Of a stretch of DNA of 64,000 nucleotides, positions 25,223 to 56,999 are shown piece after piece. The notes under the pieces are model-generated. The model was not told where the DNA came from and did no database searches. It was given only the letters and a program-made list of their open reading frames with translations. The DNA lies in assembly GCA_977017645.1 (NCBI GenBank), contig OZ360241.1, positions 35,836,001-35,900,000 on the forward strand, in the 5' to 3' direction. This DNA is from Torpedo marmorata (Eukaryota). Position 1 is the stretch's first letter; each line of letters begins with the position of its first letter. The translations under genes were made by a program, and so were the position numbers.

Positions 25223-25796
25223 CAGTGGCGGATTATCCATTAGGCTTAGGCTGAAGCCTAGAGGCCCGGAGGGTAAGGGGGCCCGAGCCGCGACTCCTGC
25301 GAGATTGTGTTTACCATGTCCATGACTTCAGACGCTGTGATTGTGGTGCAATACACAAATGTGCTGGAGCAGGTCACGCAGCATCTATATGAAGTAAAGG
25401 GTAGCCTGGTCTCGGTTTATCGTTTCACACTTACTGCGCGGGTGAAGCCGGTGACTGTGGGCCAGAGTTGGTGCTGCGCCGTTGCCAGGGTGACGCGCGC
25501 GGTGGTTTCTGAGAGCTGGCGGCGGCGGCATGAAGATTTGCGACGTGTGCGAGGAGGGGGCTCCGAAATACCGGTGTCCAGCCTGTCACCTGCGGAAGTA
25601 AGTGAACAACAGGAGGGGTGTGCGGCCAGCAGTGTCTGACCGGTGGCCGGTACTGCTAAATGAGAGGCCAGTAGCAAGTGGCGGGGGTTGGCGACGGTCG
25701 GCGGGGGTGGCCTGGGCCGCAGTGGGGAGCGAGGGGCGCCAGGGGTAGCCAGGGGGGGCCTTACTAAAGCTCAGCCTAGGGCCCGGGTGGTAGTTA
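25223..25796 (+). mobile_element. Non-autonomous hAT-family element, copy B (right TIR eroded), carrying captured host sequence
   Basis: Starts CAGTGGCGGATTATCCATTAGGCT (23/24 match to the reverse complement of the copy A right end); 25754-25796 is 43/43 identical to the reverse complement of 54445-54487; 25287-25326 is homologous to the reverse complement of about 56024-56064; no TSD recoverable. Confidence 0.88.
25530..25597 (+). pseudogene. ZNHIT3: Captured ZNHIT3-like exon 1 (N-terminal half of the zf-HIT finger)
   Basis: GCGGCGGC-ATG context, reads MKICDVCEEGAPKYRCPACHLR + AA|GTAAGT; matches ZNHIT3 CxxC..PKYRCPAC at the extreme N-terminus; no following exon recognised in the window; too short for the ORF track. 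Confidence 0.8.
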
Positions 25797-26354
25797 TGCT
25801 ATTGCCACATAGTGGAATGATCACATTGGACCTGAAGCAGAATCCAGGAGCCCATTGATTTTTACAAGGAAGCAAAGGAGACAGTAAGTAATTCTTGTAC
25901 AATTATTTTACATTACATTAGTTCTCTTAAGTATTATTTGGTGTTTCATCCTGTTACCTTTTTATTTTTTTTCAATAATGCTTTCCTTAGTTTTAATAAA
26001 TGAATGTCAGAGACATGTAAAATGATTAAAATCACCCTTTATAAAATGTCAAAGTCGTATCTCTAGCTTTGTAGGCTGTCGAAGGTCCCTAAGTATTTCC
26101 AGGGGGGACATCCTCACAGCTCCACTGAAGGCACTACCACTGCTCAGGATATTGGACTCCTCCTACATGTGATAGGTCAGCAAGACTGGCTGTGTGTACC
26201 TGGCCCTGGTGTAGATGTGGCGGTGATTTTTGGCAAAGGGGGTTGGCTAATAGTATTGTTACAGAAAGATTGATTTGGGTCTGTAATGCTGATCATTGTT
26301 ATAACTGCTGCTTACTCTGTCTGGATTCATCACCATCCCTTCTCTTATGTATTT

Positions 26355-26568
26355 AAATTTAAATTAGTCATACTAACAGGCCCTTCCAGCCCATGAGCCC
26401 GTGCCGTCCAATTACTCCCAAGGGTGGGAGGAAATCAGAGCGCCCGGGGAAAACTCATGCAGACACGGAGAGAACATACAAACTCCTTACAGACAGCGCC
26501 GGATTTGAACCCGGGTGGCTGGCACTGTAATAGTGTTACGCTAACTGCTACACTAACTGTGCCACCCA
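26355..26568 (-). mobile_element. tRNA-derived SINE (HE1/V-SINE-like)
   Basis: Same family as 1151-1395, internally deleted. Confidence 0.8.
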
Positions 26569-27461
26569 CATTTAAAAGCTAAGATCCTATGTGTTAGTTC
26601 GATTGGCTTTTCCATTCAGAATTCCACATAAATAATAGTTTACCTCTTCCCCCTGATATCTAGAGAACCTCGATTGTGGGTATACAGTATTTCCATTGTG
26701 ATTTCTTTTTATGATCTGTACCAACTTACATTGAACTGCTTCTGCATTATTTATTCTCCTATTTAATGCAATCATTTTTCTGGTCATTTGTGTCCTTCCT
26801 CAGAATTTATTTTTTGAATTGACAAAAATGGTTACTGCTTAACAAGCAGCAATGACTATATTCCAAACGGAATTTTGTTGGCTGTGAACTACATTGAGAG
26901 GTCCAATGCACTATATAAATTTGTTTCTTTTCTGTTGATGGGGTAAGTGAAGGTAAAGGCAGCATTGTTGTGAAGGATTGTTGAGAGAGAATAAGTACTG
27001 TGGCCAAATTGTCTTTTTACAGTTTCTTTTATTATATTTTAAAATATCTAAGAATATTGACAGGAGCACAGACACTTTTAAAATATTTAAATTTCACCTT
27101 CGAGCCAAATTTAATAAGTGCCTGGAACAAAAGAGTTAAAAACAAACTCCTGGAGGAACTCAGTGGGTTGAGCAGCAACCGTGGAGGGGGAAAGGAATGG
27201 TAAATGTTTTGGGATGAGACTCTTCCTCTGGAACAAAAATATTTACTGCACAGTTTTAAATCTCAATTTGTGTCACATCTTCCACTAACAAGCTCAATCT
27301 TTGTAAAACTGACTTCTGCAGGAGATCTAACAATATAACTCTTCTGAGTCAGATTTAGATGACACTTAAATAAAAATGGACATATTAGAGTTTGAGAGAA
27401 CTTTGTTCATTGTGATGGATTACAATATTTTCTTACTCTGCAAAGCACTATCCCTCTAATA

Positions 27462-27708
27462 AATTTAAATTTCGAAATACAGCATGGTTACAGGCCCTTC
27501 CAGCCCACGAATCCATGCTGCCCAATTACATCCATCAACCTACCAACGCTGTACGTCTTTGGAATGTGGGAGAGAACCGGAGCACCCAGAGGAAACCCAC
27601 ATGGACACAGGGGGAACGTACAAACCTTACAGACAGCAGTGAATTCATACCCAGGTCGCTGGTGCTGTAATAGCGTTGAGCTAACCGCTACGCTAACCGT
27701 GCCACCCC
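27462..27708 (-). mobile_element. tRNA-derived SINE (HE1/V-SINE-like)
   Basis: Same family as 1151-1395. Confidence 0.82.
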
Positions 27709-30700
27709 AAATGAAAACCCAAAAAGTGAAGCTGAAAAATGTTTTTTAAAAAAAGCAGAAATAGTCAGGGACCCTCAGAATTTCAGGCAGCATTAGTAGA
27801 GAGAGAAACAAGATGAACTTTTTGGGCCCATGATCTTTCATGAATTGGAAAAGTGAGAAAATAAGTGTGGTTTAAGCTGCAGGCAATGTATAACTATGAG
27901 AATTAAGACATCATAAATTTGAGCGGCTCTGAAAGAAGGAGATGGAATTTCTTTAAAATGCATTAATTTCCAGGGCCTTGACAGAGATCATTTTATCCTC
28001 TTTAGCCAGGTCCCAAAGGACTGAAGAATAGCCAGTGTTGTTCCTCTGTTTAAGAAAAGCAATAGAGACAAACCAGGAACTTATCGGCTCTCTATGGCCT
28101 CACTTTTCCCTGTAAAGCCCTAACCCTCTGTAACCCTGATAACCTCTAATCTCCTCAAGTTAAATCTTTTGGAATCACTTTATTTTGCTTCTCCATTTGT
28201 GGTCTTTATATTAGCTCTGAAATTCCCTTCATGAATTTCCTCAGTCTTTCTACCTCTCTTCCTGCTTAAGACATTTCTAGTAACTTACCTCTGTGATCAA
28301 ATTTTTAGTGTCCTGTCCTTATATCTCCAAGTGACACAAGGTTAAATTTAATTTGAAATCACTCTGGTGAAGCAGCTTGAAATACTTGAACATGCTACAT
28401 GCTCTTTATTAATGTGAGTTGATATGTAGTGATACAGTGAACATCAGCAAACTTCCAGTGAGAGAGGATGTTAACCAGTGTGTAAGAGATCTTGAAAATG
28501 ATTACAAGTCACACCATTTTGGAAACATACGTCTTGAAGAAGTAGTTGGAATGGTTTCGCTGAGATACATCATTAAAAAGCACTTGATTTACACTGTATT
28601 TTGCAATTTTGTACAGTCCATAGCATGTTGCACCTGAACCCATTTACGGTGAGTAATCTCAAAATGATTAGTGAAGTCAATCATGTTAAAGGTATAGTTC
28701 AATATGCAGCAGAGATAAACCTTTTGAGCAAACAGTTGAAATAGGTGGAGTTTTTTTACAAAGTAGTTTTGACAACTGTGACAAGATGATATGGCAATAT
28801 AAGTGAGAAGGAAATAACTACAAAGGGTGAGAAATAGAGGAGTGTGTGAAGCACTGAGTTGCTATTTGCATAAGACCTTTACTATGGTTATATTTTTGCA
28901 CACTAACAGAATGATCGGCAAAGTTTATTCAGAAAGAATACTTCCTTTTTGAGCTCAAAATAACTGAATCTTAATTAAGCTTAATTTGCATGCAAATGCG
29001 ATCTCTCAGGCTTCATGTGAATTTTTTTTTTAACTGTACAAAGCAATACATAAAAGAAATAGATAAAAGATTCTGAAGAGCAGCGATTAGTCTGTATTAC
29101 ACCCATGTTTCAGACATGAAGAGAAACACTTTCGTGGTTGGATGGCCTGTGTCCAAAATGGTAAATTCATGGCTTCTGTCGGATATTTTAAACAGATGTT
29201 GGGACCCTTGAATATGTTATTCAGGACCTTACTCCTGAAGAAATTAAGATCTCAGTTTGCAGTACAGACGCTTACAATGTCTTTGATAATAACATCTTTC
29301 TCTATTCCTAGCACTATATTTTTGTTCTTTGCTCCATACCCTGGACTATTTGACTACTGTTACACTTCTCCTTACACCTATTTATTTGTTTATTTGTTAT
29401 TACTGCACTACCTGCTATACGAGTTGGATTGCCTGGATGGCCCGTGAAACAAAGCTTCTTGCTGTATTTTGGTACATGTGACAATAAACATTTCAATTCA
29501 GTGTTCACGATTAACACCATGGCCATCAATTTAATATAAATCTGGAATTATATTTGAGAATAAACCATTCCTGCATTGCTCGGTGTTCCTTCAATCTAAA
29601 AGCCATCGTTTTGCCACCGCTTTTATATTCTGTTCCAGCTGCCTCTCATGGAATTTACCCTAGGACTCTGACAGGCAGGGAAACTAGCCCTACATTGAAT
29701 CCTCTTGTCCAGCATGCTGAAATGGGTGTCACAACCCGCTCTTACTCCAAATACACTGATGAAGCCAAAGGACCAATGTGTATTCATCCGCAAGTCTCAT
29801 GGACCTGAAGAAAATATAGTACATGGCTCAGTTACATAACCAACTAAAATGTAAGTGATTTTTAAAAGGCTAAGCAATAAATCCTCATCCAAATTTGAAT
29901 TATGTGGAAAGTGTGCCAGGAGACCGGCAACTCTAGGTTCAAGAACAGTTTCTTTCCAACAGCTAACAAGCTCTTAAACCTCCCCTTGTTACAATAATCA
30001 GGGACTGCTCTGACACCAGAAAAGGATTGTCTGGATTATTGCTCAATCACTTTATTTGCACAAGGATAACTGATTATTATCTATTTATTTTTACCTATTA
30101 TCCATCTATAATGATTATTATCTATCTATTGTGTACTTATTGTCTCTTTTTAATTCAATTAAGTATACTGTTGATTTTTTTTAAAGTAGCTGATCAGCTG
30201 CAGCAAGTAAGAATTTTGGTGCATATGTACTTTGTACAATGTATATGACAATCAACTCATTATCATTCAAATTTTAATGAACTAACTGTGAATAAATAAA
30301 CTCTTTGAACATGTAGTGGTAAACTTGGAAATACATTTGTGGCAATTTAATTTATGTCTGGCATATGTGGGCAATTTGACTTTGTAACACTATACCCTGG
30401 ACTCTTTGACTAACTGTAACATCACACATTGCATTGTTGTTTCATTATTGCACTTCCTCAGTACGAGATGACTTGCCAGGATAGCACACAAAACAAAGCT
30501 TTTCACTGTACCTTGGTGCACATGGCAGTAAACAATTCAATTAAAATTTCCATGATTCTATGATAATCATAGCAAGTGAATGATAGAATAAATATAATAA
30601 ATGCATGTTCACAAGTCCATCATGAATGCATCAACTGAAATTTAGAATTCTCAGCCTAGAAATAAAATATATCCTATATGTATCATAAGTAAAACACGAA

Positions 30701-31249
30701 AGTCTGCAGACACCGTAATTGAAGTAAAAAGTTTCTGCAGCATCCTATTAACATCAGAGATTTTTTCAAATACTTTCTCATGAAATACATAAATAAGATA
30801 ATCCAAGCTTTCTAACTTCACAAAGGACAATATTCAGTATAAAATCTAATCAATGTGCTTGTTACCTTCAATGTCAAGTTTGTTACTGGTTTTCTCAAAA
30901 GGCAGTCAAAGTTACCGACTTTCCTTGTCTTATTTCCTTATCCCAGTGCCTCCCAGACGTCGTGAGAGGGAGAGATGTAAATGTGAAGAAATTGGACATG
31001 TACCTCGGGCCAGAGGCATCAGCTGCTTCTTTTGTTGTTCAAAGATTCTTAAATGAAGCAAGGCAGAAAGATTAAAATATGCATCTATGTGCAAAATAAG
31101 TGATTTTTTGGAAGCTTAGAAACATTGGGATCTGGTTAACTTGACTCATCATTACTTGAGATCCTGTCAAAGACAGTAATATCTGTGAAGTTATCGACGG
31201 AGTTGGAGCGATGTTTGGCCGCACAGTCATGGGTGTTAATGTTTTTTTT

Positions 31250-31490
31250 AAAATTTAGAGTTACAGCATGGTAACAGGCCCTTCCGGCCCATGAGCCCAT
31301 GCCACCCAAATACACCAATTAACCTACAAACCCAATACATTTTTGGAGGGTGGGAGGAAACTGGAGCACCTGGAGGAAACCCATGCAGATCACGGGCAGA
31401 ACATGCAAACTCCTTACAGACAGCGCCAGATTCAAACCCAGGTTGCTAGTGCTTTAATAGTGTTGTGCTAACCGCTACGCTAACCGTGCT
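31250..31490 (-). mobile_element. tRNA-derived SINE (HE1/V-SINE-like) inserted in a decayed Rex-Babar LINE (about 31140-31885)
   Basis: SINE consensus; flanks encode THDCAAKH..DNFTD and further RT remnants on the minus strand. Confidence 0.75.
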
Positions 31491-37269: not shown

Positions 37270-37460
37270 CAGTAAAACCCCTGTTATCTGGAATTCAAGC
37301 AACCGGCAGCCTCAAGCAACCAGCAAAGAAATAGCGGAAAATAAATAGGTAAAAAATACGGAAGTTTAAAATTGGTGCACCTCGCCATTAGTTCACCAAT
37401 CACGTAACACACAATCGCAAGCAACCGGAAAATTCACTTATCCAGCATCTACCAATCTCC
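37270..37460 (+). mobile_element. Tigger-like DNA transposon left end, interrupted by a Penelope-derived element (about 37465-37680)
   Basis: TA|CAGTAAAACCCCTGTTATCTGG terminus with internal AAGCAACCGG repeats. Confidence 0.5.
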
Positions 37461-38987
37461 AAAAGTAAACACGAAAATCTGTAGACACCGTGGTTGAAGT
37501 AAAAAACACAAAAGCTGGAGAACTCAGCAGGTCAAACAGTGTCTTTTATGTAGCAAAGGTAGAAATACATAACCGACGTTTCGGGCTTGAGCCCTTCATC
37601 AAAGTATGAGAAAATGCCGGCAGATGTCCGAACAAAGGAGTGAGGGGGGAAGGGGGGTGGGAAAGGCAGTCTCCATAGGGACTGGATACCAAGGGTTTTA
37701 TTGCCATTGGATTCAACTTGGGTTGACCAAATTTTTTTTGTTGCCTTGCGGGGTCCAATTTTTTTGTTGCCAATATGGGTCAAGAAGATCTTCTGTTTTT
37801 GTGGTATTTTCAAAATTAAGCGGGAGTACTTCCTGAATGGCAGTCCTTTAGTAGTCTGCCTGCTTCTCTGATTTGTATCTCAAATTTTTTGAGCTGTTAT
37901 GGCTTTTTCATCATCTTGTGGTTCGAAGATTGTGCAACACAAAAGCCAAAATCTAATGCTTTGTCTACAGTAATTGTTCATGTTCTCTATTTTATTGAAT
38001 ATCTGCATTGCCATACAATGCAAAAGCAATTCTGTTAGAAGTTGCAATGGTTATCTGCTGTGGTCACTTGGTGTGGCGCCTGTGGTTGGATCATTTATTT
38101 ATCAAGTGCTCTGGATTGATATCAATTGTGTGTTTCTTTAACTTATGAATCTGTGTATGCAGAGCTTTACAAATCAAAATGTCTCGGGATTATTTGAAGT
38201 TGTCTACTCATGTGTTAAATGATTGGGTTTTTAATCAGAGAACTATTCATTCCTACATCTGATCTGAGGTACACTAGATAACATCAAGAAATGCATCTTT
38301 AGAGGGTAATTAGTGATTATTTTTAGTATGATTAATTCACTTAACCTGTGTGATTTTCTATTGTTGAAGATAATATTGTGGTTTACTATCATGGATTGAG
38401 TTTTTTTCATTTTAATTGTCATTACGTTAAATTCTGATTATTCATTTGTACTTTACTTCTCAGTATCCAACTTAAAAATAGCTTGGTGTTACTCCATTTA
38501 AAAATGTACAGATACCTTTTTATCTATTCTAAAAAAATCAATTGTTCTCAAATATTGCTGGCAATGGCTCTCTATTCCACCAATGCTGCCATTGTCAAAA
38601 GTTATCATAATTGTTCCTCAGTGTAATTGCAGGCTGCAAATAACTATGTAGTTGAAGCAAAGGTTTAATTCAGTGCCTCCCTCTCTAAACACATCCTTCC
38701 CAGTACTTCAGAACTATTAATCTCATTCCACCTTTCGTTCTTTATACTATCATTAAAGTTTAACACCTGCTTGCTATCACCTGGCCACTGTTTCCGTTTG
38801 CTCTTTTTAATCATTTGTTTGTAATTGATACAACTGTGGCTATTCACCTTGATTACTCAAATTGTTCCCTCTTCCCTTGTGTCAACTATATTAACGAAAA
38901 AAAAATCATTACCATATTTTTCAAACTAACGTTAATTTCTGAACAATATATCTGAGATTTAGTTAACAATTGATGTCAAATACTTTA

Positions 38988-40809: not shown

Positions 40810-42515
40810 TTTATTCAGATTTCAGATTTATTTATTTATTGTCAGAGTACATACATGACATCACATACAACCCTGAGAATCCTTTTTCCTGCAGGCGCGG
40901 CAGAATTACCACTAATGGTAGTGCAGAAATAAACTGTACACAGCGTAAAACATATAAACAAACAAAGAACTGTAAACAGATAACGAATATAAACAAATTG
41001 ACTATGCAATACAGAGAGAACAAAAAGAAAATCAATAAAGTACACAAGTAAGAGTCCCTAAATGAGTCTCTGATTGAGTTTGTCGTTGAGGAGTCTGATA
41101 GTGGAGGGGTAGCAGCTGTTCCTGAACCTGGTGATGCAAGTCTTGTGGCACCTATACCTCTTTCCTGATGGCAGCAGCGAGAACAGAGCGTGTGCTGGGT
41201 GGTGAGGGTCTTTGATGATTGCTGCTGCTCTCCGACGGCAGCTTTCCCTGTAGATGTACTCAATAGTGGGGAGGGTTTTGCCTGTAATGTCCTGGGCTGT
41301 GTCCACTACCTTTTGGAGGGCTTTATGCTCAGGGGTATTGGTGTTTTCATACCAGACTGTGATGCAGCCGGTCGGCACACTTTTCACCACACCCCTGTAG
41401 AAATTTGCCAGCGTTTCTGATGTCATACCAAACCTCCGCAAACTCCTGAGGAAGTAGAGGCGCTGACGTGCTTTCGTCACGATGCCATTGGTGTGTTGGG
41501 TCCAGGAAAGATCCTCCGAGATAGTGACCCCCAAGAACTTAAATTTGCTCACCCTCTCCACCTCTGATCCCCCACTGATCACTGGATTGTATACCTCTGG
41601 CTTTGCTTTCCTGAAGTCAACAATCAGCTCCTTAGTTTTGGTGACATTGAGTGCAAGGTTGTTGTTGGTGCACCATTCAGCCAAGTTTTCAATCTCCATC
41701 CTGTATGCTGACTCATCCCCTTCCTTTATACAACCCACTACCGTTGTATCGTTGGCAAATTTGTAGATGGTGTTATTGTCGTACCGAGCCACCCAGTTGT
41801 AGGTGTAAAGTGAGTAGAGCAGGGGGCTAAGAACACAGCCCTGTGGTGCTCCGGTACTGATGGAGATTGTGGAGGAGAGGTTCTTACCAATCTACACTGA
41901 TTATGGTCTGGAGGTGAGGAAATCCATGATCCAATTACACATTGGGGTGTTGAGTCACAGGTCTTGGAGTGTGCTGATCAGTTTTGAGGGGATGATGGTG
42001 TTAAGTGCCGAACTGTAGTCAATAAAGAGCATCCTGATGTATGCATCTTTGCTGTCCAGGTGTTCCAGGGCTTTGTGTAGAGCCAGTGAGATGGCATCCG
42101 CCCTAGATCTATTACTACGATAGGCGAACTGGAATGTATCCATGTCACCGCTCAGACAGGAGCTGATATGCTTCATCACCAGCCTTTCAAAACACTTCAT
42201 CACTGTTGATGTAAGTGCTACTGGTCGATAGTCATTAAGGCAGGTTACTACACTCTTCTTGGGCACCGGTATTATTGACGCCTGTTTGAAACAGGTGGGT
42301 ACCACGCCCTGCTGGAGTGAGATATTGAAGATATCCGTGAATACCTTGGTAAGTTGGTCAGCACAGATTTTTAATACTCAGCCAGGTACTCCATCCGGGC
42401 CGGATGCTTTCCTCGGATTCACTCTCCTGAAGGCAGCACGCACTTCATCCTCAGATACGGACAGGATGGGATCATCAGGGGACGTGGGGGTGCGGAGGGG
42501 TGGTTCTTCGCTGTT
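40810..42515 (-). mobile_element. 5'-truncated Rex-Babar-type LINE, reverse transcriptase region, degenerate
   Basis: [70 protein letters not shown] (YADD-like motif mutated), 3' tail TGACAATAAA and TCTGAA repeats; stops and frameshifts. Confidence 0.92.
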
Positions 42516-43579: not shown

Positions 43580-43810
43580 AGGGCAACATGGTTAGCTATT
43601 ACAGCGCCAGCTACCCAGGTTCGAATCCACCACTGTCTGAAAGGAGTTTGTATGTTCTCCCCGTGTCCGTGCGGGTTTCCTCTGGGTGCTCCGGTTTCCT
43701 CCTGTGTTCCAGAGATGTACAGGATTAGTAGGTTAATTGGTCACATGGGTGTAATTGGGCAGCGCGGACTCGTGGGTCGGAAGGGCCTGTTATCGTGCAG
43801 TATCTCTAAA
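43580..43810 (+). mobile_element. tRNA-derived SINE (HE1/V-SINE-like)
   Basis: Same family as 1151-1395. Confidence 0.82.
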
Positions 43811-44384: not shown

Positions 44385-44535
44385 ACATTCAAGAAAAATT
44401 TGCACAGGTACATGGATGGGAGGGGTATGGAGGGATATGGTCCGGGTGTAGGTCAGTGGGACTAGGCAGAATAAAAGTTCGGCACAGACTAGATAGGCCG
44501 AAGGGCCTGTTTCTGTGGTGTAGTGTTCTATGCTT
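44385..44535 (+). mobile_element. CR1 LINE 3' end
   Basis: ACAGGTACATGGATGGGAGG...GGCCGAAGGGCCTGTTTCTGTGGTGTAGTGTTCTATG. Confidence 0.75.
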
Positions 44536-44937
44536 CTACAGTCTCTGAGTTCCCTTAATGCTACTGTAAATGTCATACTTGACTTCCCAAAATGCAGGTT
44601 ATATGACTTCCCAAATATCTATAAGGTGTTTAGAATTCTTTCTTATAAAGGCAACTAACGTGTTAATAGAACATCGTTTACTGAAGATAGTAACTCTCAA
44701 TTAAATGCCAGTCTCTATTGCAATGCTGTACGAATACCAGACCACCTGATACACTCAGTTGTTGCTAAGTACACTTACATTTATGCACCATCCAGGAAGA
44801 TTTAAACCTGTGTAAAATGTGATGTGTGGTTGGTGAACTGCAGTTTCAATGTAAAACTTGTTTGAACTTCAACAACATTTCATTCCCTGGATGAGGGGTT
44901 GACCTTGTTGTGTGTGGCAGGACTCAGTCATTGGCTG

Positions 44938-47000
44938 AGTGAAACACGATAGACTGCAGACACTGTGATTGTAGTAAACACACTGAAATGCTGGAGGAAC
45001 TCAGCTGGTATTTAAGCATCTGTAGGAGACAACGATATATTGCCGATGTTTCGGGCCTGAGCCCTTCTTCAAGGAAAAATCAGAAAAGGCAGAAGCAGGA
45101 TATATCAGGAAGTCTCAGAATTCAAACAATGGGGGAGGAATCCAGACCAACAAAAGGTGTTAATTGGATGTGATAAGGGTCTAGGTAGAATTTATCATGT
45201 CTGTGCGAAAGGAGACAGGGAATGGAGAGACGACGGGGGGGGGGGGGAAGAAGGGGGTGGGGGAGGGGGTTTTAACGAAAGCCAGTGAAGTCGATATTAA
45301 TGCCGTCCGGTTGGAGGGTGCCCAGTCGGAAGATGAGGTGTTGTTCCTCCAATTTCCGGGTGGTCTCAGTCTGGCAGTACATGAGACCATGGACAGACAT
45401 GTCGGCAAGGGAATGGGATGGAGAATTGAAATAGGTGGCCACTGGGAGATCCACGCTATTGCGGCGGACAGAGCCGAGGTGCTCAACAAAGCAATCTCCC
45501 AGTCTGCGTCCAGTCTCTCCGATGTAGAGGAGACCACAGCGGGAGCACCGGATGCAGTAGTTAACCACTGCAAATTCACAAGTGAAATGTTGCTTCACTT
45601 GGAAGGACTGTTTGGGGCCTAGAATGGTGCTGAGGGAGGAGGTGTGGGCGCAAGTGGAGCATCTCCTGCGGTCACAGGGGTAGGTCCCAAGGGGACGATT
45701 GGAGGGGAGGGAGGAGTGGACAAGGGAGTCATGGAGGGAACGGTCCCTCCTCCGACCTCAAATTCACTTGGTCCATCTCTAGCAACACTCTCCCTTTCCT
45801 CGATCTCTCTGTCTCCATCTCAGGAGACAAACTCTCGACAGACATCTTCTATAAACCCACCAACTCCCACAGCTACCTCGACTACACCTCTTCCCACCCT
45901 GTCCCCTGTAAGGATTCCATTCCATTCTCTCAATTCCTCCATCTTGTCGCATCTGCACCCAGGATGAGGACTTCCATGCCAGATCATCAGAGATGTCCTC
46001 CTTCTTCAAACAATGTGGCTTTCCCTCTATCACCATCAACTCAGCACTCACCCGCATATCCTCCATTACCCGCACATCTGCCCTGGCCCCCTCCGCCCCC
46101 ACGTGCAACAAGGACAGGATTCCTCTTGTCCTCACCTACCACCCCACCAGCCTCCGCATCCAATACATCCTCCTCCGCCATTTCCGCCACCTACTACGTG
46201 ATCCCACCACTAGACACATATTCCCCTCTCCTCCCCTCTCTGCCTTCCGCAGGGACCACTCCCTCCGCGCTCCCTTGTCCACACCTCCCTCCCCACCAAT
46301 CGTCCCCTTGGGACCTACTCCTGTGACCACTGGAGATGCTCCACTTGCGCCCACACCTCCTCCCTCAGAACCATCCGTGGCCCCAAATAGACTTTCCAAG
46401 TGAAGGAACATTTCACTTGTGAATCTGCAGGGGTCATCGACTGCATCCGGTGCTCCCGCTGTGGTCTCCACTACATCGGAGAGACTGGACGCAGACTGGG
46501 AGATCGCTTTGTTCAGCACCTCGGCTCTGTCCGCCGCAATAGTGTGGATCTCCCAGTGGCCACCCATTTCAATTCTCCATCCCATTCCCTTGCTGACATG
46601 TCTGTCCATGGTCTCATGTACTGCCAGACTGAGACCACCCGGAATTTGGAGGAACAACACCTCATCTTCCGACTGGGCACCCTCCAACCGGATGGCATTA
46701 ATATCGACTTCTCTGGCTTTCGTTAAAAACTCCCCCCACCCCCTTCTTCCCCATCGTCTCTCCATTCCCTGTCTCCTTTCGCACAGACATGATAAATTCT
46801 ACCTAGTCCCTTATCACATCCAATTAACACCTTTTGTTGGTCTGGATTCCTCCCCCGTTGTTTGAATTCTGAGACTTTCTGATATATCCTGCTTCTGCCT
46901 TTTCTGATTTTTCCTTGAAGAAGGGCTCAGGCCCGAAACATCGGCAATATATCTTTGTCTCCTATAGATGCTGAAAAGACCAGCATTTCGGTGTGTTTAC
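44938..47000. mobile_element. Penelope-like retroelement with inverted 3' arms (minus arm about 44938-45748, plus arm about 45749-47000)
   Basis: Plus arm encodes the RT C-terminus (LKFTWSISSNTLPFLDLSV..YKPTNSHSYL) and a GIY-YIG endonuclease (CSRCGLHYIGETGRRLGDRFVQH..VATHFN..EEQHLIFRLGTLQPDGIN); the minus arm repeats the endonuclease; 14-bp TSD TCAGTCATTGGCTG at 44924-44937 and 47001-47014. Confidence 0.93.
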
Positions 47001-49700: not shown

Positions 49701-49742
49701 GAGCTTTCATCAGAACAATACATTCAGTTCTGATGAAAGCTC
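49701..49742. repeat. Perfect 16-bp inverted repeat with 10-nt loop, centre of an old palindromic element
   Basis: GAGCTTTCATCAGAAC-AATACATTCA-GTTCTGATGAAAGCTC. Confidence 0.8.
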
Positions 49743-50264
49743 TATCTCCAAAAAGATAACTTATCTTTTCTTTGAAGAAAAACATCTGAACTGCTGCAAT
49801 TTTTTTTAGTATTTCCTCTTCTCACAGCATTATACTTAAAGCTTATTGCAGCTTTGGAAAAAAAAAATCCTCCTCAGTTCTCAAATCCTTCCTGTGTTAA
49901 AAAAAATGATTGAACATTCTGAAGCATGACGGTATCCTTTGAGTTTTCACAAGCCACATACTAGCTGAAAGGGAAATCCCATTCCCAAACCTCTGCCAAT
50001 GTGCTGAGTAGGATGAGTCATTGCCTTCACCTGTGAAGACTCTGAATATGCAGCAATTTATAGACATGGATACTGTTGTTTGAATCTTCTTCTGTTCATT
50101 GAATTTAGTTGAACCTTTTCATTTTTTTTTGTGGATACTTTTTCTGTGGTTTTGTACATAAATTGTTAAGTCAACTATTTTTATTGCATTTCAAACTAAC
50201 AATAATATATGACCCGAGCCATTACTACTACCCGTTAATTACAGGACGATCAACACATGCGCAC

Positions 50265-51180
50265 CTCAAGGATGCGTGCTTAGCCTACTGCTCAACTCAC
50301 TCTACACCCATGACTGTGTGGCTAGGCACAATTCCAATGCTATCTACAAATTTGCCGATGACACCATGGTTGTCGACAGAATCACAGATGGCAATGAAGA
50401 AGCGTATTGGAGGGAGAAAGATAAGCGAGTTGAATGGTGTCACAACACAACCTTGCACTGAACGTTAGCAAAACCAAGGAGATGATAATGGACTTCAGGA
50501 GGAAATCAGGAGAACACGGACCAGTCCTCATCGAGGGGTCATCAGTGGAGGGGGTCAAGAACTTCAAATTCCTGGGTGTTAACATCTCCGATGATCTGTC
50601 CTGGAGCCTCCATGTCGATGCAGTCACGAAGAAGGCTCACCAGCGGCTATACTTTGTGAGGAATTTGAGGAGATTCAGCATGTTACCAAAGACTCTCGAA
50701 ATCTTCTACAGGTGTACCATGGAGAGCATTCTGTCTGGTTGCATCACTATCTGGTACAGAGGTACCAACGCTCAGGACAAGAAAAAAACTCCAGAGGGTT
50801 GTTAACTCGGCTTGCAACATCACGGGCCCCAGTCTTCACTCCATTGAGGACATCTACAAGAGGCGATGTCTTATGAAAGCAGCCTCTATCCTCAAGGTTC
50901 CCCACCACCCAGGCCATGCCTTCTTCACTCTGCTACCATCGGGAAAAAGGTACAGGAGCCTGAAGACAAACACAAGGAACGCTTCTTCCCTTCTGCCATC
51001 AGATTCGTGAATGAATAATGAACCACAGACACTGCCTTACATTGACTTTTACTTTTTATTGCACTATTTTTATTTATTTTGTAAGGTGGTGTGTATAAAT
51101 GTTTGCACTGTGATGCTGCTGCAAAACAACACATTTCGTGACATGTTCATGACAATAAATTCAGATTCTGATTCTGATTC
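50265..51180 (+). mobile_element. Rex-Babar-type LINE 3' part
   Basis: LYTHDCVA..IYKFADDTMVV, LNVSKTKEMIMDFR, FKFLGVNISDDLSW, tail TGACAATAAA(TTCTGA)n. Confidence 0.9.
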
Positions 51181-51369
51181 TAAGTCAGTTCTCATTGAAT
51201 GAAAACATTTTTTGAATTTGCTCCCAGATAAACCTCAGAAATGGAATAAGAATAAAAAATGCTAGAGACACTCAGCAGGTCAGGCAGCACCTGCAGATAG
51301 AAAAATAGTATTATTGTAACTCCCTGCCAAAGAATTGTAGATGGAAGTTATCTCAGAGAAGATAAAAAC

Positions 51370-52250
51370 AAAATGGCGGTCGTGCTGGAGCTGCTTGTAA
51401 GGGCAGCGCTGCCGCTGGTGCGGACCCACGGGGAGCGGAGTCACAGCCCTTCCCCAAAGGGCCCTACTGCCAAGTTCGACTGCCGACGGCTCTATACAGC
51501 CTTTAAATGGTTTGTTAAAGGAGTCGTCAGTGTTTTATTTTAAATCCTACGACCGCAGGGTCTGAGTCCAAGATGGCAGGGCCTGTGTATGGCAGTGACC
51601 ACAAGGGGTTGCAGACTCGGGGGAGAAGAGGACTGGTGCAGCCCCAGAAACAGGGAGAACACCGCCCCCCCCCCCCCCCATTGAGAAGGAGAAGCAGAGG
51701 AGACGGCCCCAAGGACAATGACCATGGCAGCAGACCAGCGAGGGGCTCTGCGGCTGGAGGACACACACAGGTGGCATGTTGTTGGTGACTTGCGGACAAG
51801 GAACCCACACAGGCTGTGGGCTGCTGGTGACTTGAGGTCAAAGGACTCACACCAGCTGCAGGCTGTTGGAGACTGGCTCCTGAGAACCAGCTATCGGAAC
51901 CGGGATTCGAGAGGATGCTGAGGGCAAGAAGGGCTCCCGAAGGGCTCTGGGTGCTGAAGGCTTCCTCATCATGTTGGAGGTTTGGATCTGGGCTTGGGTT
52001 GCCGATGGTTTGAACTGAACTGGCCTTGTGTGGCTGCAGAGGCTGCGGGAGCACTGGAGGCGAATCCACGGTCACTCAGGAACTCTGAGGGGACTCTTCT
52101 TTTGCTTTTCTTTCTCTGACTGTAAGGGGCGCCGGGCAATGCTAATGGTGAATCTTTGTCTGCCTAATGGCAGACTAAAAGGCAATTTTGTGTAATATGA
52201 CATTTTAGTTTTATGATATGACAATAAATAGTAACTGAATCTGAATCTGA
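51370..52250 (+). mobile_element. Non-coding non-autonomous retroelement with Rex-Babar-like tail
   Basis: GC-rich head AAAATGGCGG, 3' hairpin TTTGTCTGCC..GGCAGACTAAA, tail TGACAATAAA..(TGAATC)n; 3' fragments also at about 34790-35020 (+) and 21855-21940 (-). Confidence 0.65.
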
Positions 52251-52339
52251 AGTGTGAGGTATTGTACTTGGATAGGTTAAACCAGGTCAGGGCTTACACG
52301 GTGAATGATAGGGCTCAGGAATGTATTGCAGAAAGAGAT

Positions 52340-53090
52340 TTCAGATTTAAGATTTATTGTCAGAATACATGTATGACATCACATACAACCCTGAGATTCT
52401 TTTTTCTGCGGGCGAGGCAGAATTATCACTTATTGGCAGTGCAAAAAAAAAACTGACTCAACGTAGTCATGTAAACAAATAAAGAAATGTGAACAAACTG
52501 ACTTTGCAATACAGAGAGAGAGAGAAAAAAAATCAATAAAGTGCAAAAGTAAGAGTCCTTAAATAAGTCCCTGATTGGGTTTGTTGTTGAGGAGTCTGAT
52601 GGCGATGGGGTAGCAGCTGTTCCTGAATCTGGTGCTGCGAGTCTTGTGGCACCTATACCTCTTTCCTAATGGCAGCAGCGAGAACAGTGTGTGCTGGGTG
52701 GTGTGCATCCTTGATGATTGCTGCTGCTCTCCAATGACAGTGTTCCTTGTAGATATTCTCGATGGTGGGAAGGGTTTAACACATGATGTCCTAGGCTGTG
52801 TCCACTACCTTTTGCAGAACTTTATGCTCAGGGGCACTGGTGTCCCCATACCAAACTGTGATACAGCCGGTCAGCACACTTTCCATCTGTAGAAATTTGC
52901 CAGGGTTTCCAATGTCATGCCAAACCTCCGCAAATTCCTGAGGAAGTAGAGGCGCTTACGTGCTTTCTTCACAATGCCATTTGTATGTTGGGTCCAGGAA
53001 AGATCCTCTGAGATTGTGACTCCCAAGAACTTAAATTTGCTCACCCTCTCCACCTCTGATCCCTCAATGATAACTGGATCGTACACCACT
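52340..53090 (-). mobile_element. Rex-Babar-type LINE 3' fragment inserted in a CR1
   Basis: Closely similar to 40830-41590; flanks 52250-52340 and 53090-53690 are CR1-like. Confidence 0.85.
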
Positions 53091-54145
53091 GGATTGAGAT
53101 TGAGGAGTACAGGTGCACAGTTCTGTGAATGGGGCGACGCACGTAGAAAGGGTGGCGAAGAAGGCCGTTGGCACACTTGCCTTCATCAGCATTGAGTACA
53201 GCAACTGGGGGGGGGGGGGGGGAAGGGTCATGTTACAATGATACAAGATGTTGGTGAGACTTCACTTGAAGTATTGTGTGCTGTTCTGTCTACTCTGGGA
53301 ATGATATCATTAAGCTGAAAGGGTGTGGAAAAGATTCATGAGAACATTACCAGCTCTGGCAAGCTTGAATGGGGAGAGGTTGATTAGGCCAGGACATTTC
53401 TCCTTGGAGCATTAGAGGCTGAGAGGAGACCTCATATAGGTTTATGAAATCATTAAGGGCTTAGATGTCAATAGTAATAGTCTGTTTTTTCAGGGTAGTG
53501 GAGTCTAAAACTGGATGGCATAGATGAGAGAGAAAGATTTAAAAAGGACCTGAGGAATACCATTTTCACACAGAAGGTGGTTGGTATATGGAAGAGCTGC
53601 CAGAGGCAGTGGTAGAAGCGGATACAATGATAACTTTTAAAAAATACATTGAGACAGGTACATGGATAGGAAATGTTTAGAAGGTTATAGAATCATAGAA
53701 CATTACAGCACAGAAACAGGCCCTTTGGCCCATCTAGTCAGTGCCAAATTATTATTCTGCCTAGTCCCGTTAGAACCATAGAATCATAGAACATTACAGC
53801 ACAGAAACAGGGCCCTTCGGCCCTTCTAGTCTGTGCTGAACCATTTTTTTGCCTCGTCCCACTGACCTGCACTCAGTCCATAGCCCTCCTTACCTCTCCC
53901 ATCCATGTACCTGTCCAAATTCTTCTTAAATGTTAAAATTGAGTCCACATTCACCACTTCAGCTGGCAGCTCATTCCACACTCCCACCACTCTCTGTGTG
54001 AAGAAGTTCCCCTCATGTTCCCCCTAAATTTTTCCCCTTTCACCCTTAACCAAAGTCCTCTGGTTTGTATTTCACCTACCCTCAGTGGGAAAAAGTCTAC
54101 CTGCATTTACTCTGTCTATCCCCCTCATAATTTTAAATACCTCAT
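53090..54145. mobile_element. CR1 LINE 3' fragments, plus strand (about 53090-53690) then minus strand (about 53690-54145)
   Basis: GGCTGAGAGGAGACCTCATATAGGTTTAT (RLRGDLIEVY-like) and antisense tails AGAATCATAGAACATTACAGCACAGAAACAGGCCC. Confidence 0.75.
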
Positions 54146-54530
54146 TATGAACTGAATGTAGGTATATACAACCAGCTTTGGTAGACAGACTCTTAAAAGA
54201 TAATGTCTTTGGACAGTTTAACTGTACTTTTCTCCATACTCTACATTTTGTTCTATTAACGCAACACCCTGCACTTTTGTTTTATTCTTGCACTACCTGC
54301 TGTACTTGAGTATAGGTTGACTTGCCTGGATAGCATGCAAAGCAAAGCTTTTCTCTATATCTTGGAACACATCACAATGAATAATTCAATTTTTTTCAGC
54401 ACTGAATTTATTAATTACCGATAGCAGCGTAGACAGTGGCGGATTAACTACCACCCGGGCCCTAGGCTGAGCTTTAGTAAGGCCCCCTCTGACCTTGTCC
54501 CTCTGCCCCACGGCCCCCACCCTTCGTCCG

Positions 54531-54705
54531 ATGCTGTGACTGTGGTAAAACACAGAAATGCTGGAGGAACTCAGCCGGTCTCATAGTGTCCACAGGAGGT
54601 AAAGATACCTTGAAGAAGGGCTCAGGCCCGAAACGTCGGTAATACATCTTTATCTCCTACGGACGCTGTGAGACCTGCTGAGTTCCCCCAGCATTGTGAT
54701 TTTAC
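54531..54705. mobile_element. Palindromic Penelope-derived element nested in hAT copy A
   Basis: AATGCTGGAGGAACTCAGC / GCTGAGTTCCCCCAGCATT arms with hammerhead-like core at 54606-54641. Confidence 0.75.
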
Positions 54706-55071
54706 AACTCAATTTACAAACACGAGTTCGGCTTCTCCCTTTCGTTTTGCTGAGATTTCATTCAAAACAATTTATACATTACACGTTTTCTACAACTGTC
54801 ACACGAATAATAACAGACCAAATATCCCTGCAGCGAAGGAACGAAGTCAGCTTTCATTTATTAATAAAACTTGATTATGCAAAATCACAGAAAAACAATG
54901 ATTAAAAACGTAGACATATTAAAGTTTAAACAATCGCTATCACCTTTGGTTGTGTAATTTGAAGAGACATCACTGATTTAGTTTAATATTATGTAAATCC
55001 AACAATTAATTTAATGTGCAACCTTTTTTGCTGACCCTGCCTATTTCAATGAAATGTTAAAGCGGTGGGCC

Positions 55072-55172
55072 CGTCCCCCGTCCCGCTGGGCAGGGAGGAG
55101 GTCGCCGTCCCCCGTCCCGCTGGGTAGGGAGAGGTCGCCGTCCCCGTCCCGCTGGGCAGGGGGAGGTCGCCG
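55072..55172. repeat. About 3 copies of a 30-31 bp GC-rich tandem repeat inside hAT copy A
   Basis: CGTCCCC(C)GTCCCGCTGGG(C/T)AGGG..AGGTCGC repeated. Confidence 0.85.
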
Positions 55173-55573
55173 TGCCGCTCAGGCTGGGTGGGCGACCGCG
55201 GAAACCCACCGCGGCCCCGGGAGTAGACACGGGGAGGAAGGGCGGATAGTGGAGCGATACCAGTAACATAGAATGCCAGTTGATGAGTTGATTTCGGAGT
55301 TAAGATTGGAAATGTTAAACCAACAATAGAAAGATTAAAAAGTTGCAACTGCAGAATCCAAATTGGATTACAGTATTGATTTCCTTACTTCAACCTTTGT
55401 GTAGTAATTGTGAACAGTGTCAGAAATAGTCTAATAAACAAATTCAAACCAAACAAGCCTTGAAATCATGAACAAGAACCTAAACAATTAATCAGAGATA
55501 AGAAAGCAGCTTTCGCACAAACTGTGTTAGCAGGTGAATAGCCTTCAAATGATTATGGCAGTTGCTGACTTAC

Positions 55574-55953
55574 CTTCCTTCTGCTTCTGGTAGTCAGCTC
55601 CAAAGATTTCGTAGGGTGTTGAGCCGGCCCTCGATGCCGGGATGATGCCATTGGTGGCCGTGGCAGCCGTCGCCATGGCTAGCCCGGCTTCTGCAGCCCC
55701 TCCTCTGGCGTACATGCACTGCAGCTCCCTGGCCTCGTTCTCTTCTTGCGCTTGCTGCTGCCGGAGAGCCACCTGTGCAGCCATGACCCGTTGCCTCTCG
55801 GCGATCAGCATGCACTTGGCACATATGCAGTCCCTCCAGCGGCATAAGCGCTTGTGACCCTTGAACGCCAAGACCACGCCATGGTTACGACAGCGGGCGT
55901 GGTTCGGGGGTAACGCTCGGCGGCGGCTCTGAGCTGCAGGACAGGAGGCAGAC
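55574..55953 (-). pseudogene. Captured DMRTA-type (DMRTA1/DMRT4 or DMRTA2/DMRT5) DM-domain exon fragment, frameshifted
   Basis: [17 protein letters not shown] / frameshift / [81 protein letters not shown]|GTAAGT (donor at plus strand 55568-55573); 5'-truncated, no start codon, no downstream DMA exon in the window. Confidence 0.9.
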
Positions 55954-56102
55954 CTCAGACTCACTTTTTCATTGTTTGCGCCAACTTTTCGTGACGTGTG
56001 ACGGGTGGTGACGTAATAATGTCGTCATGGAGATGGTAAACATAAGCTCGCAGGGAGTCGTGGCTGCAGCCTGCAGTACGAAGTAAGTCCCTAAAAGTAT
56101 TA

Positions 56103-56331
56103 AAAAACATAAATGCTGCAGAAACTCAGCAGGTCAAACAGTGTCTTTTATGTAGCAAAGATAGAAATACATAATCGACGTTTCGGGCTTGAGATGAAGG
56201 GCTCAAGCCCGAAACGTCGATTATGTATTTCTACCTTTGCTACATAAAAGACACTGTTTGACCTGCTGAGTTTCTCCAGCATTTGTGTTTTTTACTTCAA
56301 CCACGGTGTCTACAGATTTTCGTGTTTTACT
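56103..56331. mobile_element. Palindromic Penelope-derived element nested in hAT copy A
   Basis: Near-perfect foldback about 56105-56292; 15-bp TSD TCCCTAAAAGTATTA at 56088-56102 and 56332-56346. Confidence 0.85.
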
Positions 56332-56999
56332 TCCCTAAAAGTATTACTTGTTTACTTCTGAATGTTTATATGTTTGGAACCTAATTTAGATAACAAAATA
56401 GTTTTTGTAATGAAAAAAATATATACAAAAGTACTGAAAAACTCAGGCAGCTCGGGCCCCTTCAGCCTCGTCAGCCTAATGGTTAATCCGCCACTGAGCG
56501 TAGACAAACACATTTAATGGACCGTTAAGCCACACACTTCTACTTTTCAATCTATGACTCTTTAAATATGTCTTTTACGCAAAATATAATTTCCTGCAAA
56601 AGTGCAATGGGTATGTTCGCGAAAATAATATTGTAGACTTCAATGGAAATTTACAGGGTATATTTCCTTTCAAATGGAGGGCGAAATCTTCCTGGAAAAT
56701 ATGTGTGCATTAGTGACACACGCCAGAATTGATATATAAAAATCAAATAATAAATAGTGAGGATTCAATAATGTGCCATGAGGTAATATTGCCAGGATCT
56801 GCCTCTTGCTTCAACACAAGAAGAAGTTATTGGCTGGGGTATTAGTTACCTGTTAACTTCACTGAAAGGAAGATAAGATTAAGAATGTACAGGAGTGAGA
56901 AGAAGTCAGTATTGGTTGGTACAGTATATTGGTAAGAAAGTAGCTAACGCAGTCATTATGAATGGGCTGAATTGACAAATGTTATTGAGAAGAGATAAG

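What the first reader, a model, noticed from the sequence alone, without database searches (positions are those of the whole stretch)
25223..56504. One hAT transposon family, two copies, two different captured host first exons: a Pack-type gene-capture system
Seen: two elements in opposite orientation, 25223-25796 and 54434-56496, share termini. There is a 43/43 identical subterminal block, a 23/24 match at the other end, and a shared internal segment of about 40 bp. Their interiors are unrelated: a ZNHIT3-like exon 1 in one and a DMRTA-type DM exon in the other. Both cargoes are GC-rich 5' gene ends that keep GTAAGT donors and following intron-like sequence, so they were copied from genomic DNA, not mRNA. 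Established: plant Pack-MULEs preferentially capture GC-rich 5' gene fragments; Pack-TIRs are reported in animals but are much rarer. Inference: finding two copies with different cargo within about 30 kb suggests a high-copy exon-shuffling family that samples CpG-island promoters across this genome. I do not know of such a family described in cartilaginous fish.
Basis: partly seen in the sequence, partly recalled or inferred. Interest (0 to 1): 0.93.

Follow-up and report, generated by a model that had tools for sequence, protein, structure and literature searches.

The report
hAT transposon carrying captured gene pieces
Two related non-autonomous hAT transposon copies each carry a fragment of a different host gene, and the copy carrying the DMRTA-like fragment belongs to a repeated subfamily, which makes this a rare but already known kind of gene capture.

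Summary
Elements at 25223-25797 (e1) and 54434-56496 (e2) lie in opposite orientation. They share both ends (43 identical bases inside a 46/47 match, and 23/24) plus a 42-bp internal block (37/42). e2 is a clean hAT-type insertion with a perfect 15-bp TIR and the 8-bp target duplication AGCGTAGA. e1 lacks the outer 11 bases of one end and has no target duplication.

Pfam confirms a DM domain in e2 (72.6 bits) and a zf-HIT start in e1 (30.3 bits). Each is followed by GTAAGT.

- The DM piece is not a 5' gene end. It lacks the ATG and about 48 codons found in the closest named protein (whale shark, DMRTA1-like). It also has a frameshift and has lost the first zinc-binding Cys.
- The DM piece is not a one-off cargo. 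Contigs of two organisms show the DM-bearing interior, joined to the family's block, in several diverged copies (8-11 and 7-14 distinct contigs per variant site).

The best reading is one capture followed by spread through transposition (a multicopy Pack-hAT), plus a second, truncated relative with different filler. I could not test a genome-wide, promoter-sampling system. Parental genes, an autonomous partner and e1's copy number remain unseen.

The parts
54426..54433 (.). target-site duplication AGCGTAGA, left copy, of e2
   Evidence: identical to 56497-56504
54434..56496 (-). e2: complete non-autonomous hAT-type element, 2063 bp, in the opposite orientation to e1
   Evidence: perfect 15-bp TIR (I8) and 8-bp TSD; 0 of the 6 interior ORFs that I scanned (15 ORFs of 40 aa or more overlap e2) has a Pfam match above its cut-off, so no transposase domain was seen
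54434..54491 (-). e2 'right' arm: TIR 54434-54448 plus the subterminal block shared with e1
   Evidence: 46/47 to 25750-25796; many contigs cover 54459, including 61 X1 contigs for one variant alone (table 4)
54536..54700 (.). nested copy of a very abundant palindromic repeat
   Evidence: inverted arms I3; matches to at least 8 other window loci
54707..55069 (.). AT-rich interior module of unknown origin, repeated in both organisms
   Evidence: contig pieces 54670-55141, 54671-55014 and 54751-55097 (table 8); GC 0.33
55076..55173 (.). three tandem copies of a 32-34-nt GC-rich unit
   Evidence: D1
55201..55573 (-). intron-like sequence after the DM exon piece; GTAAGT donor at 55573-55568
   Evidence: organism B contigs run through it (55200-56087, record 12)
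55574..55952 (-). partial DMRTA1-like coding exon: DM domain plus the following region up to the conserved exon end; broken
   Evidence: Pfam DM 72.6 bits; tblastn with whale shark P0155 residues 49-174; frameshift and Cys-to-His change
55953..56023 (-). 71-bp spacer of unknown origin between the family block and the DM piece
   Evidence: no match to e1
56024..56065 (-). internal block shared with e1
   Evidence: 37/42 to 25286-25326; 20 X1 contigs at 56043 (table 3)
56088..56346 (.). nested palindromic repeat (56103-56331) with 15-bp direct duplication TCCCTAAAAGTATTA
   Evidence: D7 and I1; hairpin -106.8 kcal/mol, z -25.7; one X1 contig joins 56096 to 56344 without it (table 5)
56347..56496 (-). 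e2 'left' arm, with TIR at 56482-56496
   Evidence: 23/24 to 25223-25246
56497..56504 (.). target-site duplication AGCGTAGA, right copy
25223..25797 (+). e1: shorter relative of e2, lacking the outer 11 bases of one terminus and any TSD
25223..25326 (+). e1 left arm (TIR 25223-25237), continuous with the shared block 25286-25326
   Evidence: read
25327..25404 (+). piece weakly similar to the palindromic repeat
   Evidence: 79% over 42 and 76% over 38 at word size 7 only; not found at E 1e-3
25405..25529 (+). GC-rich, CpG-rich sequence upstream of the ATG (5'UTR/promoter-like)
   Evidence: GC 0.66, CpG o/e 1.09
25530..25597 (+). zf-HIT (ZNHIT3-like) exon-1 piece: ATG plus the first half of the zinc finger
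   Evidence: Pfam zf-HIT 30.3 bits, profile positions 3-22 of 30; best solved structure is ZNHIT3 2yqq at E 0.15, then yeast Hit1
25598..25749 (+). GTAAGT donor followed by GC-rich intron-like sequence
   Evidence: GC 0.68
25750..25797 (+). e1 right subterminal block; the terminus itself is missing
   Evidence: 46/47 to e2

Best explanation
Both loci are non-autonomous members of one hAT-type DNA transposon lineage. Its 13-nt terminus, CAGTGGCGGATTA, with an 8-bp target duplication, is the same as that of 'Pegasus-like' MITEs. Neither copy encodes a transposase. e2 is a Pack-type (transduplicating) element. Between the family's arms it carries a copy of part of the first coding exon of a DMRTA1-like gene, running from just before the DM domain to the conserved exon end, and it continues into intron sequence. 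That pattern means the piece was copied from genomic DNA. The likely mechanism is template switching while a gap or stalled fork inside an element was repaired (inferred). The chimaera was then moved in trans by a transposase encoded elsewhere (inferred) and became a small repeated subfamily present in two related organisms. The window's copy is a later insertion that has picked up a nested palindromic repeat. Its DM piece is dead: no ATG, a frameshift, and the first zinc ligand lost. e1 is a close relative. It shares both arms and the block that sits directly upstream of the filler in both elements. Its filler is different: a CpG-rich piece that reads as 5'UTR, ATG and the first half of a ZNHIT3-like zf-HIT finger, followed by a donor and intron start. 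I read e1 as a second acquisition at the same position in the backbone. It can no longer move because one terminus is gone.
For: Element identity comes from TIR, TSD and shared arms. The identical 13-nt TIR with 8-bp TSD is listed for silkworm BmMITE-14, 'Pegasus-like' (table passage). No transposase domain turned up in 8 ORFs scanned from the two elements (6 of e2's, 2 of e1's). Host origin of the DM piece: Pfam DM E 2.3e-20. The closest named protein is Rhincodon typus EP00061 g25806.t1 (P0155), at 83% over 80% of the query. The best full-length hit is an eel DMRTA1-like protein, 69% over residues 8-119. The piece ends where read-through ORFs from other fishes also leave the exon, and GTAAGT follows. 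Evidence that it is a fragment: homology starts at P0155 residue ~49, 'AAERYPRT' is readable only in a shifted frame, and the first Cys of the domain is His. No other DMRTA exon occurs anywhere in the 64 kb. Evidence for repetition: at 55717, 55791, 55824, 55887 and 55999, X1 has 11, 11, 8, 9 and 11 contigs carrying a letter other than the window's, and X2 has 9, 10, 14, 7 and 4. In table 8, 3 X1 pieces (about 10% different) and 4 pieces in each of X2 and X4 (X3 repeats X2's records; about 85% alike) lie on 55200-56087. Those from organism B run from the DM exon through the shared block to 56082-56087, which ties the DM piece to the family backbone. One X1 contig joins 56096 to 56344 without the nested repeat. 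The single-copy right flank is covered by one contig. An X1 contig crosses the junction (56470-57000). The organism B flank contig aligns only from 56503, which is the element's edge. For e1: zf-HIT above Pfam's cut-off, ZNHIT3 and Hit1 as the best solved structures, CpG o/e 0.92 confined between the arms, and no second half of the finger on the + strand downstream.
Against: I saw no parental DMRTA1 or ZNHIT3 locus, so I could not test the feature that defines a Pack-TIR, a separate source copy. No autonomous element was seen. The evidence for repetition comes from short contigs. The tool itself warns that summed depth is not a copy number, and 436,462 pieces were not shown. I saw no second DM-bearing copy with both termini and its own TSD. 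e1 has no TSD and lacks one terminus, so it may never have transposed in this form. Its gene assignment rests on 23 residues (E 0.15 against ZNHIT3). With the GTAAGT donor, the codon that should give the conserved Tyr of the finger would read Lys or Asn. Searches for further copies of e1's filler and of the arm were blank. The TSD AGCGTAGA does not fit the nTnnnnAn preference that I recall for hAT elements; I did not check that preference here.
Confidence: 0.68

Rival explanations
1. The DM-bearing module is a separate repeated unit (another mobile element, or a segmentally duplicated pseudogene family) that ended up inside one hAT copy by nested insertion. The hAT element did not capture or spread it.
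For: e2's interior is a mosaic holding at least two nested repeats and modules of differing abundance. No second DM copy was seen with both hAT termini.
Against: In organism B, 4 of the 4 table-8 pieces on the DM exon that reach its upstream side (records 12, 14, 28, 30) continue through the block that e1 and e2 share, up to 56082-56087. An X1 contig links 56096 to the outer left arm at 56344. I saw no internal TIR or TSD framing the DM module.
Confidence: 0.12
2. e1 is not a gene capture. It is a rearranged or deleted remnant of the family, or two fragments brought together, and its GC-rich filler resembles a zf-HIT finger by chance or comes from non-genic DNA.
For: Only 23 residues match (30.3 bits; E 0.15 to ZNHIT3). 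There is no TSD and one terminus is missing. The split codon at the donor does not give the conserved Tyr. No other copy of the filler was found.
Against: The score is above Pfam's curated cut-off. The ATG sits at the start of the finger, as in ZNHIT3/Hit1-type proteins. A consensus GTAAGT follows. The CpG-island-like composition is bounded exactly by the two arms in correct order and orientation.
Confidence: 0.15
3. These are the true DMRTA and ZNHIT3 genes, whose first exons happen to be flanked by transposon fragments.
For: Both pieces keep exon/intron junctions. e1's filler has undecayed CpGs like a live promoter.
Against: For e2: the exon lies inside an element with an exact TIR and TSD, lacks the ATG, is frameshifted, has lost a zinc ligand, and is repeated in two organisms, and no DMA-domain exon exists in the window. 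For e1: no continuation of the finger occurs in the 38 kb downstream, and the GC-rich stretch is only about 345 bp and ends at the arms.
Confidence: 0.05

Closest known systems
Pack-TIRs of animals, especially multicopy Pack-hAT such as Pack-hAT-N8_XT of Xenopus tropicalis (Tan et al. 2021, PMC8277862; passages read)
   Same: A non-autonomous hAT element with foreign host sequence between its ends. The captured piece is short and GC-rich, was copied from genomic DNA, and the chimaera then spread. That paper states that multicopy Pack-TIRs tend to capture high-GC regions.
   Different: The paper found only 4 multicopy cases among 370, and the frog example has three copies. Here 7-14 distinct contigs per site in each of two organisms point to a larger and older subfamily. 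The cargo is coding exon plus intron from a developmental transcription factor gene. The parental copy, which that paper requires at 90% identity or more, was not seen here.
Pack-MULEs of rice and other plants
   Same: Transduplication of gene fragments between transposon ends, a bias towards GC-rich gene parts, and frequent multicopy families (as summarised in PMC8277862).
   Different: Different superfamily: hAT with an 8-bp TSD and 15-bp TIR, not Mutator with 9-10-bp TSD and long TIRs. Animal host. Only two cargo types seen here.
Maize Ds elements and 'Pegasus-like' hAT-type MITEs (silkworm BmMITE-14, PMC2997013)
   Same: Heterogeneous non-autonomous elements that share only short termini and subterminal sequence. 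The first 13 nt of the TIR and the 8-bp TSD are identical to BmMITE-14.
   Different: Those elements are not reported there to carry host exons. The identical TIR in an insect and in this vertebrate is a lead on the lineage, not proof of relationship.
dm-W of Xenopus laevis (PMC9250109; search listing only)
   Same: A partial copy of a DM-domain gene combined with hAT-family transposon sequence.
   Different: dm-W is a functional single-copy sex-determining gene in which transposon sequence became coding. Here a broken DM exon is the passenger of a transposon, and no function is shown.

Membership tests
hAT superfamily, non-autonomous element | 8-bp target-site duplication | tested here: met
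   e2: AGCGTAGA on both sides. e1: none, so it is not met for that copy.
hAT superfamily, non-autonomous element | short terminal inverted repeats beginning CAG/TAG | tested here: met
   15-bp perfect TIR CAGTGGCGGATTAAC (I8). The same 13 nt with an 8-bp TSD appear in a published 'Pegasus-like' MITE.
hAT superfamily, non-autonomous element | an autonomous partner encoding a hAT transposase with matching termini | not testable with these tools
   The window holds no further copy of the family, and no transposase domain turned up in 8 ORFs scanned from the two elements. The genome was not available.
Pack-TIR / Pack-hAT (criteria of PMC8277862, methods passage) | non-transposon host sequence lying between the two ends of a TIR element | tested here: met
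   DM exon piece in e2 and zf-HIT exon piece in e1.
Pack-TIR / Pack-hAT (criteria of PMC8277862, methods passage) | a separate parental copy elsewhere in the genome (at least 90% identity, unique, not flanked by the element) | not testable with these tools
   Only an orthologue-like model from another species was found (whale shark P0155, 83%). Nothing was found for e1's filler.
Pack-TIR / Pack-hAT (criteria of PMC8277862, methods passage) | captured from genomic DNA, not a retrocopy (intron sequence retained) | tested here: met
   Both pieces end at GTAAGT and continue without further exon sequence. The intron identity itself was not checked against a parent.
Multicopy Pack-TIR | several copies with the same chimaeric structure and different TSDs | tested here: inconclusive
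   Several diverged contigs join the DM piece to the family block in two organisms. No second complete copy or TSD was seen.
Functional DMRTA gene | start codon, intact DM zinc module, downstream DMA-domain exon | tested here: not met
   No ATG, a frameshift, first Cys replaced by His, and no other DMRTA exon in the window.
Functional ZNHIT3 gene | complete zf-HIT finger and downstream exons | tested here: not met
   Only profile positions 3-22 of 30 are present. No second half occurs on the + strand in the 38 kb downstream. Large introns are not excluded.

The most novel reading that the evidence does not exclude
An elasmobranch hAT lineage that has repeatedly picked up GC-rich gene starts and exons at one position in its backbone, and has scattered a DM-domain exon with its splice donor to tens of loci in at least two species. 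It would be a standing supply of DM-domain exons for chimaeric transcripts, of the kind that produced dm-W in frogs, and by far the largest multicopy Pack-TIR family known in an animal.
Probability: 0.2. Interest if true: 0.75.

Novelty: new member of a known kind. Interest (0 to 1): 0.45.

Why it matters
Gene capture by cut-and-paste transposons is common in plants. In the one systematic animal survey I read (PMC8277862, passages), 370 cases were found in 100 genomes and only four had multiplied. A hAT element that carried a transcription-factor exon and then spread in cartilaginous fishes would be a useful natural case for two questions: how multicopy Pack-TIRs arise, and whether scattered DM-domain exons are ever spliced into host transcripts or yield small RNAs against the parental gene. 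The two copies here share the same backbone junction but hold different fillers, so they also give a direct handle on the template-switch model. The window's own copies look dead, so any functional claim needs other copies.

Tried and rejected
Rejected: true genes. For e2 this fails on TIR, TSD, the broken exon and the repetition. For e1 it is unlikely, not excluded.

Rejected: a transposon-encoded DM protein. The piece ends at the conserved DMRTA exon boundary and is 83% identical to a shark DMRTA1-like model.

Rejected: reading the 101-base depth bins as copy numbers. The bin 56020-56120 (41,443) is inflated by the neighbouring palindromic repeat, while the block itself at 56043 has 676 with 20 contigs. 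I therefore used per-site contig counts, and I note the tool's warning that depth is not copy number.

Searches that led nowhere:
- A 20-mer from the arm against JGI metagenome contigs gave 0 matches.
- An ORF across e1's filler against 5.8 billion proteins gave 2 candidates, none scoring.
- An ORF across e2's arm gave no candidate.
- Rfam on the whole window gave 0 families.
- Paper searches for hAT or gene capture in sharks or elasmobranchs, and for DMRT plus transposon plus shark, listed nothing that looked relevant (listings only). The main text of PMC8277862 contains neither 'shark' nor 'Callorhinchus'. Its Supplementary Data 1, the list of species and cases, could not be seen and may include cartilaginous fishes.

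I could not measure e1's copy number, because the single read-laying run went to e2.


Full report
**What is there**

The window is repeat-rich vertebrate DNA, with LINE reverse-transcriptase tails and a very abundant palindromic repeat. The closest named relative of the one host-gene piece I could place is a whale shark protein.

The family's terminal motif occurs three times in the window, at 25223(+), 54434(+) and 56482(-), against 0.16 expected by chance. The 32-base subterminal block occurs twice, against 0 expected.

blastn of the two loci against each other gives:
- 23/24 for 25223-25246 against 56496-56473;
- 37/42 for an internal block, 25286-25326 against 56065-56024.

Nothing else in the two interiors aligns. 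No other part of the window matches either the family or its fillers.

**Anatomy of e2 (54434-56496)**

e2 has a perfect 15-bp TIR (I8) and identical 8-bp flanks, AGCGTAGA. It is a clean hAT-type insertion.

Read in the orientation of e1, it consists of:
- the outer left arm, 56496-56347;
- a nested palindromic repeat, 56103-56331, with its own 15-bp duplication (D7 and I1);
- the shared block, 56065-56024;
- a 71-bp spacer;
- the DM exon piece, 55952-55574;
- a GTAAGT donor and intron-like sequence down to about 55200;
- a 32-nt GC-rich tandem repeat;
- an AT-rich module, 55069-54707;
- a second palindromic repeat copy;
- the right arm, 54491-54434.

None of the six interior ORFs that I scanned has a Pfam match above its cut-off, so no transposase domain was seen there (15 ORFs of 40 aa or more overlap e2).

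**Anatomy of e1 (25223-25797)**

e1 has the left TIR and arm running straight into the shared block. It has the right subterminal block, but it stops 11 bases short of the terminus. The flanks show no duplication.

Its filler, 25405-25749, has GC 0.66 and CpG o/e 0.92, against 0.41 for the whole window. That composition ends exactly at the arms.

In both elements the foreign sequence begins right after the same block (...CCATGAC).

**The gene pieces**

The DM piece scores 72.6 bits against Pfam DM.

A phmmer search of 1.84 billion representatives gave 2,396 hits at E 0.001 or better, of which 150 were listed and I fetched 10. The best full-length vertebrate hit is an eel DMRTA1-like protein, 69% over query residues 8-119.

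The 90%-cluster search gave 1,371 hits at E 1e-10 or better among 1,517 candidates, with 120 listed. Two stand out:
- P0155, Rhincodon typus EukProt model g25806.t1, 174 aa, 83% identity over 80% of the query.
- P0156, an unnamed 106-aa ORF, 89% identity. Its ORF starts inside the DM domain, so it looks like another broken copy.

The alignment and tblastn show that the window's piece matches P0155 only from about residue 49. The start codon and the N-terminal region that P0155 and the eel protein share are absent.

A three-frame translation shows 'AAERYPRT' in one frame and 'ARCRNHG...' in another. So there is a small deletion at the start of the domain, and the first Cys reads His.

The piece ends exactly where read-through ORFs from other fishes leave the exon, and GTAAGT follows.

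No other DMRTA exon is present in the 64 kb. This is therefore a genomic-DNA copy of the 3' two-thirds of a coding exon plus the start of the intron. It is not a 5' gene end or a promoter.

The zf-HIT piece scores 30.3 bits (cut-off 24.7) over profile positions 3-22 of 30. The best solved structures are human ZNHIT3 (E 0.15) and yeast Hit1. It starts with ATG and ends at GTAAGT.

With that donor, the split codon would give Lys or Asn where the finger has a conserved Tyr (my recollection of the consensus). No second half of the finger lies downstream on that strand. 'ZNHIT3-like exon 1' is plausible but rests on 23 residues.

**Copy number and spread**

The one read-laying run used Logan contigs of X1 (organism A) and X2-X4 (organism B, one sample), at 80% likeness. 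The tool warns that summed depth is not copy number, so I lean on distinct contigs instead.

- The right flank, 56525-57000, is covered by one contig per run.
- Inside the DM exon and just upstream of it, at 55717, 55791, 55824, 55887 and 55999, X1 has 11, 11, 8, 9 and 11 contigs carrying a letter other than the window's. X2 has 9, 10, 14, 7 and 4.
- At most of these sites nearly all the depth carries the other letter. The window's copy is therefore a minority variant.
- Of the 32 pieces listed in table 8 (436,462 were not shown), three X1 pieces lie on 55591-55974 with about 10% differences.
- Four pieces in each of X2 and X4 (X3 repeats X2's records) lie on 55200-56087 at about 85% likeness.
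- The organism B pieces that reach the upstream side all continue through the shared block to 56082-56087. That is where the window's private nested repeat begins.
- One X1 contig joins 56096 to 56344 without that repeat.
- The block at 56043 is covered by 20 X1 contigs.
- The right arm at 54459 has 61 X1 contigs for a single insertion variant.

The right arm therefore looks very abundant. The block and the DM-bearing interior belong to a much smaller subfamily. That subfamily exists, with the DM piece attached to the family backbone, in both organisms.

An X1 contig crosses the element/flank junction (56470-57000). The organism B flank contig, 2,337 nt long, aligns only from 56503. This suggests, but does not prove, that this particular insertion is absent at the orthologous site. 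That would mean the chimaera moved after it was formed.

**Interpretation**

e2 is a Pack-type hAT element: one capture of a DMRTA1-like exon fragment, followed by amplification.

e1 is a truncated relative with a different, CpG-rich, ZNHIT3-like filler at the same backbone position. It is most simply a second acquisition.

Template switching during repair, and mobilisation in trans, are inferred from what is known of such elements (PMC8277862, passages). They are not shown here.

I could not test it further.

**Comparison with what is known**

Pack-TIRs are described in animals: 370 in 100 genomes, 208 of them hAT, and only four multicopy. That paper says the multicopy ones tend to carry high-GC sequence.

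The 13-nt terminus with an 8-bp TSD is identical to that of a 'Pegasus-like' silkworm MITE.

My paper searches listed nothing that looked relevant for cartilaginous fishes (listings only).

Xenopus dm-W combines a partial dmrt1 copy with hAT-10 sequence (listing only). It is a loose parallel for what scattered DM exons could become.

**Verdict**

This is a real feature and a new member of a known kind. The notable point is that it appears to be a multicopy Pack-hAT shared by two species and carrying a DM-domain exon.

The defining test for this class, a separate parental gene copy, remains undone.

Noticed in passing
window 56088-56346 and 54536-54700; also about 4400-4631, 10712-10856, 11039-11187, 17066-17153, 21282-21424, 37463-37607, 44938-45074, 46913-46964: A palindromic repeat of roughly 190-230 bp. 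The copy nested in e2 has 93-nt arms that are 97% complementary, folds at -106.8 kcal/mol (z -25.7), and is flanked by an unusually long 15-bp direct duplication, TCCCTAAAAGTATTA. It is by far the most abundant sequence in the contigs of both organisms (summed depth up to 14.6 million against about 9 for single-copy flank). No Rfam family matches it.
   Followed up: partly
window 54434-54446 / 56484-56496 / 25223-25235: The 13-nt terminus CAGTGGCGGATTA is letter for letter the TIR listed for silkworm BmMITE-14 (8-bp TSD, 'Pegasus-like') in PMC2997013. The same terminus in an insect and a cartilaginous-fish-like genome hints at a widespread hAT lineage, or at horizontal transfer.
   Followed up: no
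window 11000-14000: A GC-rich block (GC 0.59-0.70, strong negative GC skew) with proline-rich repeat ORFs open in three frames at 12026-12852. It is a tandem repeat or CpG island of unknown meaning.
   Followed up: no
window 45181-46865: An inverted pair of similar ORFs, 45197-45622(+) and 46136-46765(-), sharing '...EVDINA.RLEGAQSEDEVLFLQ...'. They probably represent two copies of another repeat, head to head.
   Followed up: no
window 41058-42305(-), 50434-50805(+), 60468-60839(+): LINE reverse-transcriptase C-terminal fragments. ORF 41058-41792 matches Pfam ALKBH8_N (41.6 bits), a match I recall as typical of such LINE tails, and RVT_1 weakly.
   Followed up: partly
window 54000-54143: A further extremely abundant repeat just left of e2, with summed contig depth of 1.2-1.6 million in X1. 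I did not identify it.
   Followed up: no
window 55076-55173: Three tandem copies of a 32-34-nt GC-rich unit inside e2. No listed contig bridges it, so its length may vary between copies.
   Followed up: no
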